The notes beneath the pieces were generated by a model that searched no databases, had not been told where the DNA came from, and saw only the letters and a program-made list of their open reading frames with translations. DNA of 64,000 bases from Podarcis pityusensis. Taxonomy: Eukaryota. Where the stretch lies: assembly GCA_964106645.2 (NCBI GenBank), contig OZ067038.1; one strand, 5' to 3'. Both the position numbers and the translations under genes were made by a program. Shown here piece after piece: positions 4,867 through 49,520 of this stretch (its first letter is position 1; every line of letters starts with the position of its first letter).

Positions 4867-6628
4867 GTGTGTGAGAGCATGCATATGCTTCAGGAAACCT
4901 GAACTACGTGCAATCAAAGTAGCAGGCATCCCAAGACTGCACAACCTGACTACCCCATGCAATCGCGTACTCCTGATACAGAGCACAAAACTCATAATTT
5001 TGAATACTGTAAAGACACCAGGTTGGAGCCTCAATTTTCTTTCTCACACTTGGGCAACCAGAATAAGATCAGTCTTATGTTTTGCTGCAACTGGGTTAAC
5101 AAACTCATGGGGTGTGTAGGGTGCTGGCAAAGAAAGTTTAGTAGAGACATGCATCACAGAGGGGGCTGCATGTACTTTATGTTACCTGCCCTGCAACCCC
5201 AACTTCCACACTAAAGCTGGATTGTGTGACATGCATAAATTCTGCTTTTTCTACTTCTACTAATCTATGTCCTGTGCGCAAGCCCAAAACATGCAAACCA
5301 AACGCAGCAAACAAAGCTCACCCTAATCAGCTCCCTATCTCTTAGGTTAACTTATCCCACAAGATTGCTAAGAGACTAAAATGCCACTCTGAGTAACCTG
5401 AAAGGAGGCTGAAATACAAAATGAAGGCTAAAGTATTAAATAGAGACATCTTGGTCTTCCCGCCCCTCCTAATCCCCCCCCGCCCCGCTTTATTTGTCTT
5501 GGGGTGGGTGCGGGGTTTTTTTCCTTGTCTGTTTTGGGGTGGTGGTGCTAGTGGTTCTGAGCATCCCCACTTTTTCTTCTGTGAAATGGTACCCACAGCT
5601 GTTTTTCAGATTTCCAACGTGCCCGCAGATGTAATCTCTTTGCAATTAACTCTGCAGTTTAGCATCATTTCATTTCCCGTTATAGACCACAGGTGGGTCA
5701 GCCAAGTGACCTCCAGCTGTCGTTGGCTACAATTTCCATCAACCCTGAATACTGGCCATGTTGGCTGGGGAAGGTGGGAGTTGTAGTCCAAGGCTGTCCG
5801 GGAAGCACCATGTTGGCTATCCCTGCAATAGACTATGGAACAAGGGAAGGGACGCCCAAGTGCTTAAGAGCACAGAATAAACATTTCCTGCAAACAGCAC
5901 ACAAAAGAGAGAGAAGGAAACAGGCTTAGCATTGTCTCATTACATACTTGCTCCCAGAGTAATTAAGCACGGTTGTGATTGCAAACATTTATAACCTTTA
6001 AGGATAGCTTTGAATAAGAACTCAATACTTAAAAACTGTCGTGCACATAGAATGCATGAGCATGCCAAATATTGTAGGGTTCCCCCCACCCCCTGATGAT
6101 TTAATGATGTTTTCTAGCCAAGTTACCTTTGCGCTGCATAAGGTGACTAAATGAAAGCACCGCACCGATTCAAGCCGAGGTTATTAACACTTGCCTAGAG
6201 CCAACGATTTAAGAACGACAGGAAGTTTCATTATTACCCATGGGGCACTTCTCAACTCCCCATTCCTCTATTCAGATAAATTATTCAGAAGTGAAAACAC
6301 AGTATATGATATCAGCTGTGATAAGAAGCGGCCTTGTACTCAGTCAGACCATTGATCCGTTTACCTCACTATTATTTACTACTATATCAGCAGCAGTATA
6401 CACAAGTACTATCAGCCACACTCCAGGGTTTTGGAACATTAACACTCCCAGACTGTTAGCGCACATTTGGGTTGAACATATCTGATTTTTCTGTGTGCTC
6501 TTTTGTGCGTGCCTGACCACACAAGTGCTTTCAGTTGAACTCTGCCTTAATGTTTCCCATCCACACAGGTAAGCTGCGCTTGATGGGATACATTTGCACT
6601 GTGTGCTGTTGTCCTTGCTTCTCAATTA

Positions 6629-6877
6629 CAGTCATACCTTGTTACATTTGTTTCAGGTTAAATCTTTTCAGGTTGCGTCCCGCGGTGACCTGGAAGTACT
6701 GGAAGGGTTACTTCCAGGTTTCGCCGCTCGCGCATGCGCAGATGTGCAAAATGACGTCACGTGCATGTGCAGAAGCGATAAATCGTGGCCCATGCACGCG
6801 CAGACGGGGGTTGCGTTCTGCTCATGTTGTGAACAGGGCTCCGGAACGGATCCCGTTCGCAACCAGAGGTACCAGTG
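6629..6877. mobile_element. pogo/Tigger-like MITE
   Basis: CAGT...(C/G)TG ends, TA TSD; related copy at 20479-20731. Confidence 0.75.
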
Positions 6878-8099
6878 TATTGCTCTTCTGCCCTCCCTGA
6901 ATTCCAGAAACCTGAGGTCCATTGTAGGCAAGCACACGGACCTGTGTACATATGCTGTTTTTAATACAAGTTTTATATATATATATATATATATATTTTA
7001 CACACACACACACACACACATATGTGCCAGACTTGTACAAAACAGCTGATTTAAAAGCATAAGTAGTGTGTGCCAGGGCCAACACTAGCCAACCAAGGAG
7101 CACCTTGCCAGCAGAAGGAGGGGGTGCGGTGACAGATGGCACTCAGCAAAATGTCACCACATATGGGGGAAAAAAAAAAAGCATGCCACACAATGTGCTT
7201 CGATTGAGTAGCATGCAAGTTTATGATGTACTCCCCCCCCCTTTACCACATTAAATTGGGGGGGGGGGAGAGAGAGAAGAGCAGGATGAGGACAACATTG
7301 TGTGGCCAATGCAAAAAAAAAAAAAAAGCACATATGCACAAATACGCTTTAAACTGCTGTGTGAACATCACCTTAGCCAGAAATATTTCCCAGGGAAAAA
7401 GTGAACCTGGAACCTTTTGTATTTAAAGCAAGGTACTCTACCACTGAGCTCATCTCCGAATCTTGTGATAGACAAGATTGAAAACATGGAAGTATTCTCA
7501 ATGTTACAATCTATAGCAAAGCTTCAACTGTGGAGGACTTTGCACAAGGAGTTTGGCTGTCTTAATTCTGGAGGACCATGTAATATATTACAAATTAACA
7601 GGCACAGAGCATTTACCCTTGGTGTGCCCTATAAATGTGCAAAGTGGATGCATTTGTTTATTTCACCATCTGTACAAGCTGCAGGGAGTTGCTGTTAGCT
7701 TTGGCTCTGCACCCCATGGCTGAATCTGCAGTCTTTGAAGCTTCCCTGACTCTTAAAGAGGTTTTAGGGGGAAACGACATTTGCTGTTGCTCAGAGGGTT
7801 AGACTAGAGCAAGGTGAACATACTCTTCCTTCCAATCTTTGTTTTTAAGATATAAAAAGGCTATTTATGGATTTAGATATTTATAGGAATTTGTCCAGGT
7901 TAGTGTCAATAATTCTGTTTTACTATTACCATTTGAAGCTATTTCCTATCCCACTGTGCACACACAAAATATTATGAATAGTGTATTGGCTAACACACAA
8001 CTTCATACATAAAACTGAAGTTAAAAATAGGTTGTTGTTTTCTGAAATGCATGTTTTGCTGCATCTGTCTTTGTATATTCTACTATCATTCCTCTAAAC

Positions 8100-8349
8100 C
8101 ATGGGTAGGCAAACTAAGGCCCGGGGGCAGGATCCAGCCCAATTGCTTTCTAAATCCAGCCCGCGGACGGTCCAGGAATCAGCGTGTTTTTACATGAGTA
8201 GAATGTGCCCTTTTATTTAAAATGCATCTCTGGGTTATTTGTGGGGCATAGGAATTCATTCATTCCCCCCAAAAAAATATAGTCCGGCCCCCCACAAGGT
8301 CTGAGGGACAGTGGACTGGCCCCCTGCTGAAAAAGTTTGCTGACCCCTG
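8100..8349. mobile_element. hAT-type MITE
   Basis: CA...TG TIRs; 8-bp TSD CTCTAAAC. Confidence 0.85.
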
Positions 8350-9146
8350 CTCTAAACCAACCTTTCTTAACTGGTGCTGTCCTTCCTGGCTGGGGCTGAT
8401 GAGAAGGCACCATTTTACAGCCTACTGTGAACAAAAGTTCTTAGCATACACGTATATCTGCCTCTTTGACAAAGTGTTCTGAGCCTCAGGAAAAAAATAT
8501 GTACCAGACAAGTGATGATGACAAGGTTACAGAGAGACTCACTCCTAATGGATTCAGGTGGATTTGAAAGTATAAGCATTGCCTGCGCCTGCATTAGTTA
8601 CCAAAATTATTTCATCATTTGTGGAGTATCAATGCTCACGTGGACTTTGCAACATGCTCTATCATAGTATGGCAGGTGCACGATGACTACGCTGATGAGT
8701 TCTCGATCTGACTTCGTTGCCCATGGTAAGTTAGACTGGATGGGAGGGTCCAGTGTGTTAACACTTCTTCTGCTTTTACAGACACAACATGCCTCGTGAA
8801 TCTGCCTCCCATTTCCTGCCATATTAGAGAAGGAAGCACCAACATGCATATGCATGTTCCTTTGTGCTGGCAAGAAACTTGAATCCTGTGGGGAATCACA
8901 CACACCCGTTTTACACCAGGGCAATTGTTACAGCACGCTGCAGGCTCACTTTCTGGTCAGTATACCATCTCTGTGCTGTACAGACCCTAAACTCTCCCCC
9001 CACCACAGAGAATCCTTCATCTATGAATATCTTACTGTCATCCCAAAAGAAGCCCTGCTCAAAACACGACCACATTGCCAAGTGGCTTGGCACAAGAACC
9101 AAAGAACATTACACTCACTTGCCACTCAAAGAAATCATTCGTTATT

Positions 9147-9149
<3 letters not shown>

Positions 9150-9185
<36 letters not shown>
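9150..9185. repeat. (TA)n microsatellite
   Basis: Direct reading. Confidence 0.95.
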
Positions 9186-9187
<2 letters not shown>

Positions 9188-9847
9188 CCAGATTAAAATA
9201 TTGGGCAGAGGCTAGTCAAGCAACGTGGCAATTTAGCATAAGTGCTTTTAGAAGATATGACTGGAAATTGTAAAAGCATCTTTAAAAAGTACCCTTACAC
9301 ATGTGAACAGTGGGAAGAAAGGGTTGGGATTTTGATCTCACTATGCTTTCGAGGGATTTCGCTGACTGCCTGTCATGGATGAAAGTAAGCAAACTTCAGA
9401 AAATGAAAGTAATGGAAGAACAGGAACCGTAATTTTATACAATTTGGCAATAGAAAGAAAACTACTGGAGGAGCTACCTATCAAGCGTATTTGCTACTCT
9501 TGTTGGTTCGGTAAAGAAACAAAGGCACTCATTTTCAGAATAGATTACAAAATCCCTAAGCAGACATTTCCTGCTCTTAACCTCAAATTACAGAGGAAAG
9601 AAAATAACAGCCTAATTATGCACTCCTTTAGAATTCTTGCAACAACATTAATCCTGATTAATTAATCTAGCATGAATAAAGTTGAAGATATTTCTACAAG
9701 GTTTCCAATTGTAATTTGGCTTAATTATCTAGAAATTTATCTCGAAAGTTTCACCCAGAGAGCAAAAAATACTCAGAGGAGCAGTTTTAGATGCTGAAGG
9801 CAGGCAGGCAGTAATATATATACACCAGATAGATAGATACCGAATAC

Positions 9848-43209: not shown

Positions 43210-43686
43210 TTTGTGATAAGTTGAATTTTATGGAGCAGTTGATGTTGATGGAGTACAAGTCATACCTACACTCAGGATGGATACTTGAGACCAGTGTTCT
43301 GACACAATGTATGACACGTTGGGTATGGAATGGAGACAGTGTCCAAGGCCATGCTGCTTGCTTTTAAGGGAACAGATGTGACTCTGGCTCCGTCCACTCA
43401 TTGCATGTGGGCCTTGGATGCTTGCCCATGAGGGAATGAGGTCCTTGGGTTGCAAAAAGTGTCATGGAATTCTACTCGATATGATTCAGAGCAGTACTCC
43501 GATGTATAGTTAGCAGAGTAAAAACTTAAACACGTTGCAGGATTCCCCCAAAATAGACCAGAGGCAATTGTATCTCATCCAGCAGAACTTTACTGCTCCT
43601 GAAGGCAAATGAGCATAATGGTCACAAATCCAATATGTTCAGGATTGGCACTGTCCATAGGAAATCCAGTTGCAGCAGACTTAACT

Positions 43687-44094
43687 TGTCAGGGAACTGC
43701 CATCGGAAGGAAGGGAAGTGAAAGGGCTCACACAGGTTGGGAGAGACTCAGCAGCTGAAGAGGGAACCAGTAGGGGGAGAGGAGCTGGGCTGAGGGAAAG
43801 GGAGCTGGAGGGATGGCTCAGAGACACTTCCAGCGAAAACAGTGGGGAGGTTTCAGGACCTCCTGTAGGGACACCCACTCCTCGCCGGAAACTGTCACGC
43901 AGAGAGTCCAGAAGACGTGTTTCCGTTAAGGAGCTTTTATGTTGGAAGCGATTCCGAAAGCAACCACTGTCGGAATCTGCCAGCGACTGACGGAGCCATG
44001 TTTAAGGGGCTCCGTTACAGACAGAGGTTTGCAAACTTGACCAAACTCTGAGGGACTAGGATTTTACACACAAGCAGCTCATCGTCCCATCACA
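43687..44094 (+). repeat. 5' LTR (408 bp)
   Basis: tgtcagggaac...cccatcaca; identical to 48770-49177. Confidence 0.96.
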
Positions 44095-44096
44095 GC

Positions 44097-44107
44097 ATTC
44101 CGACAGT
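44097..44107 (+). promoter_or_regulatory. Self-priming primer binding site ATTCCGACAGT
   Basis: Starts 2 nt after the 5' LTR, lacks the TGG of a tRNA PBS, and is the exact complement of LTR 43966-43976. Confidence 0.8.
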
Positions 44108-44139
44108 CTTCGTGAGCAGCTTGTGCAGGAGAAGGCATC

Positions 44140-45153
44140 ATGAGCAACCCAGCCGGAACCGGAGAAGCAGGAGCTGGAGCGGGTCCAAGCCTGGAAGAAA
44201 GGTACCGGGTGTTGGAGGTCCAGCTAGCGCTGCAGACGGCGAGGCTTGAGGAGAGGAGGGCTCAGGATGCAGACAAAAAGGGGAAAGACACCCAGCTCGT
44301 CAGAAAGGTACCAGGATTGGTGCAGAAGTTTGGGGGGGAGCCCAAAGACTATCATGGCTTTCGGACAGAGATGCAATATGCCCTCAATCTGCAGTTTGAT
44401 GAATTCCCTGACGAGGAATCAAGAGTGGCTTTCGTGATTGGGCATCTTGAAAAGGGGGCGAGAGACTGGGTTAGACCCCTGATGGCAGCGAATAGTGACG
44501 TCCTAAAGGACACGATGAAGTTCTTTCGCGCCATGGATCTGATGTTTTCCAGCGATATTGAACAGGGAGTGGTCCGCAGACAGTTAATGGCTTGCAAACA
44601 GGGGAGCCGATCTGTCCGTGAGTACTGGACTGAATTCACCATGTTGATCCATAAATTGGGGTGGGATCTATCGGCGGAACCCATTCAAATGCTTTTTGAA
44701 GAAGGGCTTTCTTCGGCTGTGAAAGACGAACTTTCCCGGGCGCCCAGGGCGGAGTCTATGGACCAGCTGACCAAATCAGCGCTGACCATAGGAGCGCGCC
44801 AGGAGGCGAGAGCATTGGAGAGGCGGGAAGGGAAGGGGGAACGTTGGAAGGAGTTCCGCATTCCAGACATTCCAGAGCCAACTTTCCCGCCGGCAGAGCC
44901 GATGGAAATCGGAACAGCGCGCGCGCGCGCAGTTTCAAAGCCCAGTGAGGGGGGAAAGAAGGAGGGAAAAGGCGCCCGGAAATGCTATCTCTGCCAACAG
45001 CCAGGTCACTTTGCCAGAGTCTGCCCCCAGAGGAAGGAATGGCAAGGGATGGTAGGAGCTGTGGAGGGAAGAGAGGAAGAAATACCGAAGCAAGTAAAAG
45101 CCAACGCCTGGCTGCCACCGTCGGGGCACAGCAGTCAGGCCAAAGAGCAGTGA
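44140..45153 (+). CDS. gag: Gag (337 aa): N-terminal coiled coil, retrotransposon capsid (PEG10/RTL-like), CCHC zinc knuckle
   Basis: QGSRSVREYWTEF major-homology-like motif; CYLCQQPGHFARVC knuckle; intact ORF directly after the PBS. Confidence 0.93.
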   Translation: MSNPAGTGEAGAGAGPSLEERYRVLEVQLALQTARLEERRAQDADKKGKDTQLVRKVPGLVQKFGGEPKDYHGFRTEMQYALNLQFDEFPDEESRVAFVIGHLEKGARDWVRPLMAANSDVLKDTMKFFRAMDLMFSSDIEQGVVRRQLMACKQGSRSVREYWTEFTMLIHKLGWDLSAEPIQMLFEEGLSSAVKDELSRAPRAESMDQLTKSALTIGARQEARALERREGKGERWKEFRIPDIPEPTFPPAEPMEIGTARARAVSKPSEGGKKEGKGARKCYLCQQPGHFARVCPQRKEWQGMVGAVEGREEEIPKQVKANAWLPPSGHSSQAKEQ

Positions 45154-48100
45154 AAGTGCCCACGCCAGAACCTCCCAAACCCGCCCTAGTGATAGAAGTG
45201 GCGCTAGAGCTGCCAAACGGACACCCTCTAAAGATAAAGGCGCTGTTGGACTCAGGCAGCTCCTGCAATTTCATGAGCAAAGAGTTTGCAGCTGAACACC
45301 AGATACAGACGATCCCTTTAAGCAACCCCCTGCAGGTGACCACGATCGATGGCAGGGAGCTGTTGGGAGGAGAAGTCAGCTTGCAGACCGTCCCAATGAT
45401 AATGAAGGTGGCAAGGCACACCGAACTGATAGCGTTTAATGTGGCCACCTTGGGAGGAGCTCCCATTATATTGGGGATGAGCTGGCTAGCGTTACATGAT
45501 CCGCTGGTGGGCTGGCATCAGAGAGTGGTTTCTTTTGGTTCAGCACATTGCTTAGAACACTGCAAAGAGGGAAAGGGTTTGGCAGGGGCCCAAGCCACCC
45601 TAGCAGGGACTGAAGTAACGGAGAACGTGAAGGTACCACGACAATACGCAGATCTCCGCGACGTCTTCAGCGAAAGGGAAGCTGACCAATTACCCCCGCA
45701 TAGACCCTTTGACTGTCAAATCAATTTACTCCCTGGGGCACAGCTCCCTGTAGGCAAGCTGTACGCCATGTCAGACAGAGAGATGCAGGAGCTAAGAGAG
45801 TTCATTGACAAGAACCTGAAGAGAGGGTTCATCAGAGAGTCCAGGGCGGTGGGGGGCAGCCCAGTGTTTTTTGTGGATAAAAAAAACACGAACAAGCCGA
45901 GGCTTGTGTGTGACTTCAGGGCCTTAAATGCAGTGTCAGAACCAGTGGCTTTCCCTATGCCCAGGATTGACGACATTTTGACAAGGGTCAGGAAGGGAAA
46001 GATTTTTACTAAACTGGACCTAAGGGGGGCGTACAACCTGATACGAATAAGGAAGGGGGATGAATGGAAAACCACCATGTTCACCCCTTTGGGGGCATTT
46101 GAATATTTAGTTATGCCCTTCGGCCTACAAGGAGGCTCCGCGTGCTTTCAATCGTTTATGAACCACGTCCTGGGGCCTTTGCTTTACAAGAATTGTGTGG
46201 CCTTCTTAGACGACGTGTTGGTGTATTCTGAGAATGAGGAGCAGCATGTGAGAGACGTCAGAGAAGTGTTGAGCAGGCTGCAAGCCAACCAGCTGTGGGT
46301 GAAACTGGAGAAGTGTCAGTTTCATACCAAGGAGGTGGAATTCCTGGGGTATCGCCTGTCAGACAAGGGATTGGCCATGGATCCCGGCAAGGTCCAGGCG
46401 GTGCTGGAATGGAAAACACCCAAAACAAGGAAGGATGTGCAGAGGTTCCTAGGATTTGGGAACTTCTATCGTAAGTTCATCCGAAACTTTGCCCACCTGA
46501 CGGCGCCCATTACGGACTGTCTCAGCAGTAAGAAGAAGTTCGTTTGGACTGAGGAGGCGGAGCGAGCATTTGAGGAACTAAAAAGGGCCTTCGCCTCGGA
46601 ACAACAACTCCTGCATGTGGATTTACAAAAACCGATGAGAGTGGAAACTGACGCATCAGACAGAGCGATTGGGGCGGTGCTTCTGCAGCCAGGGAAGGAG
46701 GAGTCAGAGTGGAGACCGTGTGCCTTTTTTTCGCGAAAGCTGAACAAATCCGAGAGGAACTACACGGTGTATGACCGAGAACTACTAGCCATTCATGAGG
46801 CGTTCCGGAGATGGAGGCACCTGCTAATTGGCGCACAACATAAGGTGCAAGTGTGCACTGACCACAAGAACCTAGAGTATTGGAGGACGGCACGAGTGCT
46901 CAACCAACGGCAAGTGAGATGGGCCCAGGAGTTCTCCAAATTTAACTTTGAGATTTGTTACGTGCCAGGCCCAGAGAACATTAGGGCGGACGCTCTCTCA
47001 CGCAAACCTGAATATTTGGAGGAGGAGGGAGCACCCGAAGAGAGACATGTCATTCCAGAGGACCGCTGGGTGTGTGGGGCGGCATTGGTGGGACAAAGAG
47101 AACTGGTAGAGGAAACAGAGAATGATGAATACGCCCAGAATAAGCTCAGAGGTCTTAGGGGTGAGGGAGAGGAACCAGGGGGTTTCGAGGAAAGAAATGG
47201 AGCTTTGTATTACAAAGGGGCACTGTATATCCCTGAAGGAGACTTAAGGGGGAGGGTACTCAAGCAGTTGCACGACAGCCCCACGGCGGGGCATTTTGGA
47301 CAACACAAAACCATGTGGTTGGTCACCAGGGAATTTTGGTGGCCTAAGGTGAGGGAAGATGTACGGGAGTATGTAAGAGGGTGTGAGCAATGCCAGCGAG
47401 CCAAAGGGGAGAGGCGGGCACCGGCGGGGCTATTAGAACCCTTACCAACCCCAGAACGACCTTGGGAGGCAGTGTCGATAGATTTTATGACTGATCTGCC
47501 GAAGTCCAAGGGGAAAACAGCCATCATGGTGGTGGTAGACCTACTAACAAAGATGTGCCACTTTGTAGCCTGCTCGCATGCAGTCACGGCGGAAGAGACA
47601 GCGAAGTTATTTGTAGAACACATTTTTAGGTTGCACGGAGTGCCATTGAGGGTGGTCTCAGACCGAGGAAAACAATTTACGTCCAGGTTCTGGAGGAAGC
47701 TCATGAGCTTACTGCAGGTGGAGGTCAACTTTTCGACTGCCCGGCACCCTGAAACCAACGGGCAGGCGGAAAGAGCAAACGGGGTCCTCCAGCAATACCT
47801 GAGGTGTTATGTCAATGACAGAGAGAATGACTGGGTAGAAAAGTTGGCGCTGGCGGAATTTGCCTACAACAATGCCGAGAATGTGTCCACAGGGATGAGC
47901 CCCTTCTTGGCTAATTATGGGTGTCATCCCAGGGCTTTCCCAGGGGGAGAAGGGGAGAGATGGGGTGTCCCGGCAGCCGAGCATTTTGTAGAAGAAATGG
48001 AAGCAATCCATCGTCAGCTCCAACTCAACTTAGAAAGGGCGAAGGAAGAATACAAGAGGCAGGCAGACAAGAACCGAAGGGAAGGTGAAACCATAAGGGT

Positions 48101-49073
48101 GGGAGATAGGGTGTGGCTGTCAACCCAAGGGTTGCCGTTCAAAGGAGGTTGTAAGAAATTAAGACCCAGGAGATTGGGTCCCTTTGAGGTCATTCAACAG
48201 GTCAACCCAGTGGCTTTCAGGCTCCGGTTACCCAACCACATGAAACTGCACCCAGTATTTCACAGGTCGTTACTGTCACCGTATGAGGGGGGACGAGAAG
48301 GGATGGCCACTCGGGGACCGGTCATAGAAGAAAGGGAATGCAGCAGCCATGTGGCAGAAATCCTCGACGCCAGATGGAAGGGGGATCAGGTGGAGTATTT
48401 GGTAGCGTGGGAAGGAGAACCGGAGTCAGAAAACACTTGGGTAATGGCAGAAGATATCAATGACGAGGTATTGATAGAAACGTTCCATCAAAGGTTCCCA
48501 AGGAAACCTCAGCCTGTGGAGAGGTTCCGGAGGGAATACTTTGGGACCACCGATGAGGAGGAGGAGTTGGAAGGATTCTCGGAATCGGAAGGGGAAGGGG
48601 AGATGGACTCTGAGGAGGAGGAGTACTTCGAGACCAGGAACCGCAACAGGTGGAGAGAAGTGTTCGGGACATCGGAAGATGAAGGAAGTTCATTCCGGGG
48701 TTTTGCCTCCTCACCGCCCGTAGAGGAGGGGGCGAGAGGGGATGAAGGGGGCCCTGGAGGGGAGGTGGATGTCAGGGAACTGCCATCGGAAGGAAGGGAA
48801 GTGAAAGGGCTCACACAGGTTGGGAGAGACTCAGCAGCTGAAGAGGGAACCAGTAGGGGGAGAGGAGCTGGGCTGAGGGAAAGGGAGCTGGAGGGATGGC
48901 TCAGAGACACTTCCAGCGAAAACAGTGGGGAGGTTTCAGGACCTCCTGTAGGGACACCCACTCCTCGCCGGAAACTGTCACGCAGAGAGTCCAGAAGACG
49001 TGTTTCCGTTAAGGAGCTTTTATGTTGGAAGCGATTCCGAAAGCAACCACTGTCGGAATCTGCCAGCGACTGA
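44982..49073 (+). CDS. pol: Pol in the -1 frame relative to gag (probably expressed as Gag-Pol): protease, RT, RNase H, integrase, chromodomain, extended acidic/basic tail
   Basis: LLDSGS (PR), FLDD (RT), ETDASD (RH), H-H-C-C plus SIDF/VSDRG/NGQAER (IN), GPF motif and chromodomain; uninterrupted 1363-codon ORF. Confidence 0.95.
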   Translation: MLSLPTARSLCQSLPPEEGMARDGRSCGGKRGRNTEASKSQRLAATVGAQQSGQRAVKVPTPEPPKPALVIEVALELPNGHPLKIKALLDSGSSCNFMSKEFAAEHQIQTIPLSNPLQVTTIDGRELLGGEVSLQTVPMIMKVARHTELIAFNVATLGGAPIILGMSWLALHDPLVGWHQRVVSFGSAHCLEHCKEGKGLAGAQATLAGTEVTENVKVPRQYADLRDVFSEREADQLPPHRPFDCQINLLPGAQLPVGKLYAMSDREMQELREFIDKNLKRGFIRESRAVGGSPVFFVDKKNTNKPRLVCDFRALNAVSEPVAFPMPRIDDILTRVRKGKIFTKLDLRGAYNLIRIRKGDEWKTTMFTPLGAFEYLVMPFGLQGGSACFQSFMNHVLGPLLYKNCVAFLDDVLVYSENEEQHVRDVREVLSRLQANQLWVKLEKCQFHTKEVEFLGYRLSDKGLAMDPGKVQAVLEWKTPKTRKDVQRFLGFGNFYRKFIRNFAHLTAPITDCLSSKKKFVWTEEAERAFEELKRAFASEQQLLHVDLQKPMRVETDASDRAIGAVLLQPGKEESEWRPCAFFSRKLNKSERNYTVYDRELLAIHEAFRRWRHLLIGAQHKVQVCTDHKNLEYWRTARVLNQRQVRWAQEFSKFNFEICYVPGPENIRADALSRKPEYLEEEGAPEERHVIPEDRWVCGAALVGQRELVEETENDEYAQNKLRGLRGEGEEPGGFEERNGALYYKGALYIPEGDLRGRVLKQLHDSPTAGHFGQHKTMWLVTREFWWPKVREDVREYVRGCEQCQRAKGERRAPAGLLEPLPTPERPWEAVSIDFMTDLPKSKGKTAIMVVVDLLTKMCHFVACSHAVTAEETAKLFVEHIFRLHGVPLRVVSDRGKQFTSRFWRKLMSLLQVEVNFSTARHPETNGQAERANGVLQQYLRCYVNDRENDWVEKLALAEFAYNNAENVSTGMSPFLANYGCHPRAFPGGEGERWGVPAAEHFVEEMEAIHRQLQLNLERAKEEYKRQADKNRREGETIRVGDRVWLSTQGLPFKGGCKKLRPRRLGPFEVIQQVNPVAFRLRLPNHMKLHPVFHRSLLSPYEGGREGMATRGPVIEERECSSHVAEILDARWKGDQVEYLVAWEGEPESENTWVMAEDINDEVLIETFHQRFPRKPQPVERFRREYFGTTDEEEELEGFSESEGEGEMDSEEEEYFETRNRNRWREVFGTSEDEGSSFRGFASSPPVEEGARGDEGGPGGEVDVRELPSEGREVKGLTQVGRDSAAEEGTSRGRGAGLRERELEGWLRDTSSENSGEVSGPPVGTPTPRRKLSRRESRRRVSVKELLCWKRFRKQPLSESASD

Positions 49074-49177
49074 CGGAGCCATGTTTAAGGGGCTCCGTTA
49101 CAGACAGAGGTTTGCAAACTTGACCAAACTCTGAGGGACTAGGATTTTACACACAAGCAGCTCATCGTCCCATCACA
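48770..49177 (+). repeat. 3' LTR (408 bp); first 304 nt are part of the pol ORF
   Basis: Direct repeat of the 5' LTR, preceded by the purine tract GGAGGGGAGGTGGA. Confidence 0.96.
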
Positions 49178-49256
49178 TAACTTAAACTTACAGTTACTTA
49201 TAATAAAATGAAACAAAACCTTAACACTAAGCATACTATTTGCAGAACACCACACC

Positions 49257-49298
49257 GGAAGGAAGGAAGGAAGGAAGGAAGGAAGGAAGGAAGGAAGG
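49257..49298. repeat. (GGAA)n microsatellite
   Basis: Direct reading. Confidence 0.95.
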
Positions 49299-49520
49299 GA
49301 GAAACCCAGACTCCTTCTGACCTTACTTTTATAGCCAGCATGACCTTGACTGAAGAGATAACAGAACCAGCTTAAACCAGCTGTAATCAGCTTCTCTGAA
49401 GGAATAACCCAAACATCATGAACCTTCTGCTTGTTTCTTTCACACAGAGAAGCTTCCAGAACCCTCTTGAATTAATTGGAATAGGAAAGATCTCTACACA
49501 TCAGATCAATACTTTCTGTA

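What the first reader, a model, noticed from the sequence alone, without database searches (positions are those of the whole stretch)
43966..44125. tRNA-independent, Tf1-style self-priming architecture
Seen: no TGG-type PBS. ATTCCGACAGT (44097-44107) is the exact 11-nt complement of ACTGTCGGAAT (43966-43976) in the LTR. U5 CACAAGCAGCTCATCG (44069-44084) can pair with leader CGTGAGCAGCTTGTG (44111-44125), with one mismatch and one bulge. Hairpins ACGGAGCC/GGCTCCGT (43990-44015) and CAGAGGTTTG/CAAACTCTG lie in R-U5. Known: S. pombe Tf1 primes with the first 11 nt of its own mRNA, and this is predicted for the Tf1/sushi group. Inference: the TSS is at 43966 and RNase H releases the 11-mer primer. 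An intact amniote copy is a rare experimental substrate.
Basis: partly seen in the sequence, partly recalled or inferred. Interest (0 to 1): 0.78.

Follow-up and report, generated by a model that had tools for sequence, protein, structure and literature searches.

The report
Self-priming gypsy retrotransposon in a lizard
A complete, very young jumping gene of the Tf1/sushi (chromovirus) group in a lacertid lizard carries the sequence layout of an element that primes its own reverse transcription instead of borrowing a tRNA; this layout has long been predicted for the group, so it is a clean example rather than a discovery.

Summary
The element spans 43687-49177. It has two 408-bp LTRs that are 100% identical, a TAACT target duplication, intact gag and pol, and a polypurine tract. 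Two bases after the 5' LTR sits an 11-nt site (44097-44107). It is the exact complement of 43966-43976 inside the LTR (chance about 1 in 1000), and no TGG-type tRNA site is present.

- **Structure:** the predicted RNA pairs these two stretches with probability near 1. A second U5:leader duplex crosses the first, as in the Tf1 'pretzel', but is only weakly significant (p about 0.045).
- **Start site:** one of only two all-A/T hexamers in the LTR lies 31 nt upstream of 43966.
- **Family:** the protein tree puts the element among squamate and other vertebrate chromoviruses, inside the fungi/vertebrate cluster. More distant members of that cluster fetched here show the same layout with compensatory primer/site changes.

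Tf1-style self-priming is therefore the best reading (about 0.7).

The start site at 43966, RNase H release of the 11-mer and covariation within the lizard family could not be tested.

Self-priming is already described for Tf1/sushi elements of fungi and vertebrates, and intact chromoviruses are common in reptiles. This scan has also noted the same design in other windows of this genome. Verdict: new member of a known kind, modest interest.

The parts
43682..43686 (+). target-site duplication TAACT (5' copy)
   Evidence: Same 5 nt at 49178-49182, directly flanking the LTRs.
43687..44094 (+). 5' LTR, 408 bp, starting TGTCAGG and ending CATCACA
   Evidence: 100% identical to 48770-49177 at an offset of 5083. 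The termini fit the Sushi LTR end motifs TGTYANR / CNTNACA (PMC3601003).
43935..43940 (+). TATA-like TTTTAT, 31 nt upstream of the putative start
   Evidence: One of only two all-A/T hexamers in the LTR. Its function is inferred.
43966..43976 (+). putative self-primer, and by inference the first 11 nt of the transcript (start of R)
   Evidence: Exact complement of 44097-44107. The start site itself was not tested.
43988..44017 (+). 10-bp hairpin in R. In the 3' LTR copy its base holds the pol stop codon
   Evidence: Minimum-energy fold. The stop TGA at 49071-49073 corresponds to 43988-43990.
44022..44050 (+). second R/U5 hairpin (CAGAGGTTTG / CAAACTCTG, one bulge)
   Evidence: Minimum-energy fold.
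44069..44084 (+). U5 arm of the U5:leader duplex
   Evidence: Pairs with 44111-44125, -20.9 kcal/mol. It crosses the central duplex, giving the pretzel topology. p about 0.045.
44097..44107 (+). primer-binding site, 2 nt after the LTR end
   Evidence: Exact complement of 43966-43976. Pair probabilities are 0.9-1.0 for most of the duplex in the RNA ensemble.
44111..44125 (+). leader arm of the U5:leader duplex
44140..45153 (+). gag, 337 aa (Retrotrans_gag / Ty3 capsid-like, CCHC knuckle)
   Evidence: Pfam. The only PDB sequence match is the PEG10 capsid 7LGA, E 3e-5.
44982..49073 (+). pol, 1363 aa from its first ATG. Its frame is -1 relative to gag and open from 44949. Domains: PR, RT, RNase H, integrase, SH3_Tf2-1, chromodomain. 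It ends inside the 3' LTR
   Evidence: Best PDB match is Ty3 Gag-Pol 7Q5B, E 8e-140.
48756..48769 (+). polypurine tract GGAGGGGAGGTGGA abutting the 3' LTR
   Evidence: Read directly. The junction varies among copies in other runs (table 5c).
48770..49177 (+). 3' LTR. Its copy of the 11-mer is at 49049-49059
49178..49182 (+). target-site duplication TAACT (3' copy)

Best explanation
This is an intact, recently inserted Ty3/gypsy chromovirus of the Tf1/sushi (fungi/vertebrate) group in a lacertid lizard. It most likely starts reverse transcription by self-priming.

Proposed sequence of events:
1. Transcription starts in the 5' LTR at or next to 43966.
2. The first 11 nt of the RNA fold back onto the site at 44097-44107, two bases past the LTR.
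3. A U5:leader duplex (44069-84 with 44111-25), and perhaps a short 3-bp extension of the central duplex, hold this 'pretzel' together.
4. The element's RNase H cuts after nucleotide 11.
5. The freed 3' end primes minus-strand synthesis through U5 and R.

Shown here: the anatomy, the exact complementarity and its position, the absence of a tRNA 3'-end site, the predicted stability of the duplex, the placement in the family, and the same layout with compensatory changes in more distant relatives.

Inferred from Tf1: the start site, the cleavage and the priming itself.
For: - **Intact, young element:** LTRs 100% identical, target duplication, open gag and pol, polypurine tract.
- **Complementarity:** 11/11 complement placed 2 nt after the LTR's CA, p about 1e-3. 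No TGG between the LTR and gag.
- **Fold:** the central duplex has pair probability about 1 for RNAs ending at 44130 to 44300 and is kept in the minimum-energy fold.
- **Pretzel:** the crossing U5:leader duplex is -20.9 kcal/mol. This matches the three-duplex pretzel described for Tf1/sushi elements (bioRxiv 10.1101/2022.12.06.519325). In Tf1 the first 11 bases pair with the site and RNase H cuts between bases 11 and 12 (PMC7175516).
- **Start site:** TTTTAT at -31 and a CA at -1/+1.
- **Placement:** the tree puts the window with Podarcis, inside a squamate and then a vertebrate clade (support 99). That clade sits inside a 35-row cluster (support 100) holding fungal and metagenome elements with self-primer signatures. 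Plant elements with a tRNA-iMet site (L068) fall outside.
- **Relatives:** L015 has 13 nt (p 0.0005) and L050 has 10 nt (p 0.004). L012 and L042 carry ATAATCTT and L034 carries ATAACCTT. Each matches its own LTR about 90 nt before the LTR end, and the site starts 1-3 nt after the LTR's terminal CA. That is a compensatory change. L093/L096 give a second example.
- **Gag:** sushi/PEG10-like.
Against: - No RNA 5'-end data. All runs found are contigs, so the start at 43966 is unproven.
- No AATAAA-type signal anywhere in the LTR, so R cannot be delimited. The fish Sushi LTR model does have such a signal (PMC3601003).
- The U5:leader duplex is only weakly significant (p about 0.045). The other flanking duplex is just 3 bp.
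- The site was not compared with the host's tRNAs or tRNA halves. The window has no tRNA gene.
- Covariation was shown only in relatives 36-41% identical in pol, not within the lizard family.
- An 8-bp inverted repeat (43950-57 / 43970-77) spans the putative start. The 11-mer may therefore also belong to another structure.
- Tf1 and sushi-ichi themselves were not in the tree.
Confidence: 0.72

Rival explanations
1. The complementarity is real and selected, but it works as a long-range RNA stem in the 5' leader (packaging, dimerisation, translation control or strand transfer). Priming would use another primer. Alternatively the transcript starts upstream, so the 11-mer is internal rather than the 5' end.
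For: - The start site is untested.
- An 8-bp inverted repeat straddles 43966, and the first 7 nt of the site recur at 43951-57.
- No polyadenylation signal defines R.
Against: - No alternative primer site is visible, and there is no TGG in the leader.
- The pairing ends exactly at 43966, with a TATA-like motif at -31.
- The same geometry recurs with compensatory changes in relatives of a group for which self-priming was shown experimentally in Tf1.
Confidence: 0.15
2. The 11-nt match is chance. The element is primed by a host RNA that was not examined, such as an internal tRNA fragment or tRNA half, as in copia-type elements.
For: - The host tRNA set could not be examined.
- Half-tRNA sites exist in other LTR elements (PMC6317226). 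One has been noted elsewhere in this genome (s1-711365, unchecked).
Against: - The chance of such a match at this position is about 1e-3.
- Half-tRNA priming is reported only for Ty1/copia lineages in that survey.
- The element's clade is the self-priming one.
Confidence: 0.07

Closest known systems
Tf1 / Tf2 of Schizosaccharomyces pombe (and Tj1, Tosmo1-3, Tcry1)
   Same: Chromodomain-bearing Ty3/gypsy element. An 11-nt self-primer is complementary to a site just past the 5' LTR's CA. It has three-duplex pretzel potential and no tRNA site.
   Different: The host is a vertebrate. Gag and pol are separate frames with a -1 overlap, not a single ORF or an in-frame stop. Pol reads through U3 into R. 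Priming here is untested, whereas it was shown experimentally for Tf1.
sushi-ichi and the vertebrate V-clade chromoviruses (Amn-ichi/-ni/-san)
   Same: Vertebrate chromoviruses of the fungi/vertebrate cluster, for which self-priming was predicted (Butler et al. 2001, as cited in PMC6317226 and PMC4600332). The LTR termini fit the Sushi motifs. Gag is PEG10-like.
   Different: The host is a squamate. No AATAAA in the LTR.
Podarcis muralis 'Gypsy retrotransposon integrase-like protein 1' clusters (P0001-P0003)
   Same: 93-96% identical over RT to integrase. The same pol tail reads through the LTR to the same stop.
   Different: Only proteins were available. Their tail has Asp where this copy has Glu, so position 10 of their 11-mer must differ.
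PEG10 / RTL (sushi-derived mammalian genes)
   Same: Homologous capsid domain, CCHC knuckle, and a -1 gag/pol arrangement.
   Different: Domesticated single-copy genes without LTRs, primer site or mobility.

Membership tests
Tf1/sushi group (self-priming chromoviruses) | Ty3/gypsy domain order PR-RT-RNase H-IN with a C-terminal chromodomain | tested here: met
   Pfam: RVP_2, RVT_1, RT_RNaseH, Integrase_H2C2, rve, SH3_Tf2-1, Chromo, in that order.
Tf1/sushi group (self-priming chromoviruses) | Pol falls in the fungi/vertebrate chromovirus cluster, apart from plant chromoviruses | tested here: met
   Quick ML tree, 37 rows. The window sits in a squamate clade, then a vertebrate clade (99), then a fungi/vertebrate cluster (100). 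Lolium and L068 (tRNA-iMet site) are outside. Caveat: Tf1 and sushi-ichi themselves were not in the tree. Equating this cluster with the Tf1/sushi group rests on the literature.
Tf1/sushi group (self-priming chromoviruses) | The site just downstream of the 5' LTR is complementary to an LTR-internal sequence, not to a tRNA 3' end | tested here: met
   11/11 complement starting 2 nt after CA, p about 1e-3, and no TGG in the leader.
Tf1/sushi group (self-priming chromoviruses) | The complementary sequence is the very 5' end of the mRNA | not testable with these tools
   Only Logan contigs were available, with no raw RNA reads. Indirect support: TTTTAT at -31 and pairing that ends at 43966.
Tf1/sushi group (self-priming chromoviruses) | Two further duplexes between site-adjacent sequences and LTR sequences downstream of the primer (the 'pretzel') | tested here: inconclusive
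   The U5:leader duplex is -20.9 kcal/mol and crosses the central duplex, but p is about 0.045. The upstream-adjacent duplex is only 3 bp.
Tf1/sushi group (self-priming chromoviruses) | RNase H cleavage after nucleotide 11 releases the primer | not testable with these tools
   This is biochemical. It is known for Tf1 (PMC7175516).
Tf1/sushi group (self-priming chromoviruses) | Primer and site covary among related elements | tested here: inconclusive
   Met in distant relatives: L012/L042 against L034, also L050, and L093 against L096.
tRNA-primed LTR retrotransposons | Site complementary to the 3' CCA end of a tRNA (TGG... next to the LTR) | tested here: not met
   No TGG in 44095-44139. The plant relative L068 shows what such a site looks like: TGGTATCAGAGC.
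half-tRNA-primed LTR retrotransposons | Site complementary to an internal part of a tRNA | not tested
   No host tRNA set was available. The window has no tRNA gene, and Rfam finds nothing in 43600-44300.

The most novel reading that the evidence does not exclude
In this lizard family the self-primer and the start site lie inside the pol reading frame. In the 3' LTR copy, all of U3 and the first 25 nt of the putative R are translated as the pol C-terminal tail. The same 11 nt would then serve as initiator, as primer of reverse transcription and as codons (Pro-Leu-Ser-Glu).

Two P. muralis subfamilies keep the frame and the stop, one with an in-frame 16-residue insert. If the tail is functional, this is a new variant of the Tf1/sushi design in which primer/site covariation is tied to protein evolution.
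Probability: 0.35. Interest if true: 0.5.

Novelty: new member of a known kind. Interest (0 to 1): 0.3.

Why it matters
Self-priming has been shown experimentally only in fission-yeast elements. For vertebrates it is a sequence-based prediction. A clean, young squamate example with an exact 11-nt duplex gives sharp predictions that can be checked by observation: a cap site at 43966, and a specific compensatory base at 44098 in the sister subfamily. It also shows that the design persists in amniotes. It does not change the picture of how this group replicates.

Tried and rejected
- **The look-up of encoding contigs** was closed, so no DNA of the Podarcis, Anolis or Crotalus relatives could be fetched.
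- **The look-up of sequencing runs** gave only contig-level runs and no run on record as RNA.
- **Read laying** shows the family is very abundant in four coded organisms and present in a possibly-RNA run. It cannot show RNA ends, and it listed only 40 of 1013 differences. None of those 40 fall in the 11-mer or the site, which is not proof of identity.
- **Viral contigs with the single protein** found nothing.
- **A relaxed self-primer search on single-LTR circular contigs** had too little power; individual p values were 0.07-0.8.
- **A broad test of the leader against the whole R-U5** was not significant, 333 of 2000 shuffles. Only the test restricted to the last 60 nt of U5 reached p 0.045.
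- **Rfam** found nothing in 43600-44300. The bacterial promoter/terminator scan is irrelevant here.
- **Papers:** the original Tf1 papers and Butler et al. 2001 are not held in the library, so their content is cited second-hand. No paper held reports self-priming specifically in lizards.
- **A canonical -1 slippery site at the end of gag** was looked for and not found.

Full report
**Anatomy.** The finding sits in the 5' LTR and leader of a complete LTR retrotransposon at 43687-49177.
- The two LTRs (43687-44094 and 48770-49177) are 408 bp and 100% identical. They start TGTCAGG and end CATCACA, and are flanked by a 5-bp target duplication TAACT.
- Between them lie gag (44140-45153, 337 aa; Retrotrans_gag / Ty3-capsid-like plus a CCHC knuckle) and pol in the -1 frame. 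The pol frame is open from 44949, its first ATG is at 44982, and its stop is at 49071-73.
- Pol carries protease, RT, RNase H, integrase (H2C2, rve, SH3_Tf2-1) and a chromodomain.
- A polypurine tract GGAGGGGAGGTGGA abuts the 3' LTR.
- It is the only copy in the window.

**Observation.**
ACTGTCGGAAT (43966-76) is the exact complement of ATTCCGACAGT (44097-107). The latter begins 2 nt after the LTR's terminal CA.
- Pairing cannot be extended by a single base at either end.
- With the site held within 8 nt of the LTR end, 18 of 20,000 shuffled LTRs gave 11 nt or more, p about 1e-3.
- No TGG occurs between the LTR and the gag ATG, so a site for a tRNA 3' CCA end is absent.
- Both R/U5 hairpins are in the minimum-energy fold.

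**RNA structure.**
- RNAs starting at 43966 and ending anywhere from 44130 to 44300 keep the 5'-end:site duplex with pair probabilities of about 0.9-1.0.
- The U5 arm (44069-84) and the leader arm (44111-25) can form 14 pairs at -20.9 kcal/mol. The U5 arm lies inside the loop closed by the central duplex and the leader arm lies outside it, so the two helices cross. A nested-structure predictor cannot show such a crossing.
- This is the topology of the three-duplex 'pretzel' described for Tf1 and other Tf1/sushi elements (bioRxiv 10.1101/2022.12.06.519325).
- On its own this duplex is only modestly unusual, p about 0.045. The other flanking duplex is just 3 bp after a bulged C.

**Start site.**
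- This is the main untested inference. The runs that hold the element are all kept as assembled contigs, and no listed holder is on record as RNA.
- Contigs cannot show RNA ends, and no start or end pile-ups were reported.
- Indirect support comes from three points. The LTR has only two all-A/T hexamers, and one (TTTTAT, 43935) lies 31 nt upstream of 43966. The -1/+1 bases are CA. The complementarity stops exactly at 43966.
- Against a tidy picture, no AATAAA-type signal exists anywhere in the LTR, so R cannot be delimited.
- R must extend at least to 43990. The pol stop codon in the 3' LTR copy corresponds to 43988-90, at the base of the first hairpin.

**Family.**
- The best protein relatives are Podarcis muralis 'Gypsy retrotransposon integrase-like protein 1' clusters at 93-96% identity, so the host is a lacertid lizard. 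Anolis is at 48-49% and Crotalus at 43-44%.
- Gag's only solved-structure relative is the PEG10 capsid. Pol's best is Ty3.
- In a 37-row tree the window groups with Podarcis, inside a squamate clade, inside a vertebrate clade (support 99). That clade sits inside a cluster (support 100) with fungal and metagenome elements. A plant sequence and L068, whose site is the classic tRNA-iMet TGGTATCAGAGC, fall outside.
- This matches the 'fungi/vertebrate' cluster, which the literature equates with the Tf1/sushi group. Tf1 and sushi-ichi themselves could not be added.

**Relatives.** I fetched 80 metagenome loci and 18 IMG/VR loci encoding pol relatives, 34-45% identical.
- Among those with two LTRs and clear TG...CA ends, L015 has a 13-nt site complementary to its own LTR (p 0.0005) and L050 a 10-nt one (p 0.004).
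- L012 and L042 carry ATAATCTT. L034 carries ATAACCTT. Each matches its own LTR about 90 nt before the LTR end, which is a compensatory change.
- In these loci the site starts 1-3 nt after the LTR's terminal CA. Here the offset is 2 nt and the primer lies 129 nt before the LTR end.
- L093 and L096 give a second compensatory example, but individually with weak statistics.
- The design and its covariation are therefore real in this cluster. They were not shown within the lizard family.

**Lizard family.**
- Because pol reads through U3, the 11-mer is translated (Pro-Leu-Ser-Glu). P. muralis clusters P0003 and P0002 keep the frame to the same stop but have Asp for Glu.
- Position 10 of their 11-mer (43975) must therefore be C or T. 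Self-priming predicts G or A at the partner position 44098.
- Laying contigs of four runs showed a very abundant family in three organisms and in a possibly-RNA run of a fourth.
- Two near-fixed differences lie in U5 (44068 A>G, 44084 G>A) in three of those organisms. The first would add a G-C pair to the U5:leader duplex and the second would remove its terminal pair.
- No difference inside the 11-mer or the site is among the 40 rows shown, but 973 rows were not shown.

**What is known.**
- Self-priming was demonstrated for Tf1: the first 11 bases pair with the site and RNase H cuts between bases 11 and 12 (PMC7175516).
- It has been proposed for Tj1 and for Tf1/sushi elements 'from fungi to vertebrates' (PMC4600332; PMC6317226; Butler et al. 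2001, cited there).
- No held paper reports the design specifically in lizards.
- First-stage notes of this scan describe the same design in at least four other windows of this genome. These notes are unchecked.
- The finding is therefore a new, unusually clean member of a known kind.

Noticed in passing
window 48756-49073: The pol frame runs through the polypurine tract, all of U3 and 25 nt past the putative start site, stopping at 49071-73. P. muralis relatives P0003 and P0002 keep the frame to the same stop. One has an in-frame 16-residue insert, which suggests coding constraint on the LTR.
   Followed up: partly
window 43687-44094: No AATAAA, ATTAAA or common variant occurs anywhere in the LTR. 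The signal for 3'-end formation and the R/U5 border are unknown.
   Followed up: partly
window 43950-43977: An 8-bp inverted repeat, GATTCCGA / TCGGAATC, straddles the putative start site. The first 7 nt of the primer-binding site (ATTCCGA) are thus repeated in U3, 9 nt upstream of the 11-mer.
   Followed up: no
window 44949-45153: The gag/pol -1 overlap is 204 nt. The only in-phase X XXY YYZ heptamers (GGGAAAG at 44952, GGGAAAA at 44964) lie upstream of the CCHC knuckle (44977-45030). A shift there would leave Gag-Pol without the knuckle. No canonical site lies near the gag stop.
   Followed up: no
window 49258-49300: A (GGAA)n microsatellite lies about 80 nt downstream of the insertion.
   Followed up: no
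L081-L098 (IMG/VR contigs): Contigs of 5.4-7 kb filed as viral genomes are LTR retrotransposons. Most have terminal overlaps of 45-123 nt, i.e. assemblies collapsed on the LTR.
   Followed up: partly
L002 143-3935 / 5488-9244; L004 62-844 / 5315-6092: The closest metagenome relatives (44% identical) are arranged as internal region, one LTR, then internal region again. That is, tandem element arrays sharing one LTR.
   Followed up: no
L068 7596-7610: A plant-type chromovirus in a metagenome has the classic tRNA-iMet site TGGTATCAGAGC, 2 nt after its LTR. It served as a negative control for the self-primer search.
   Followed up: yes
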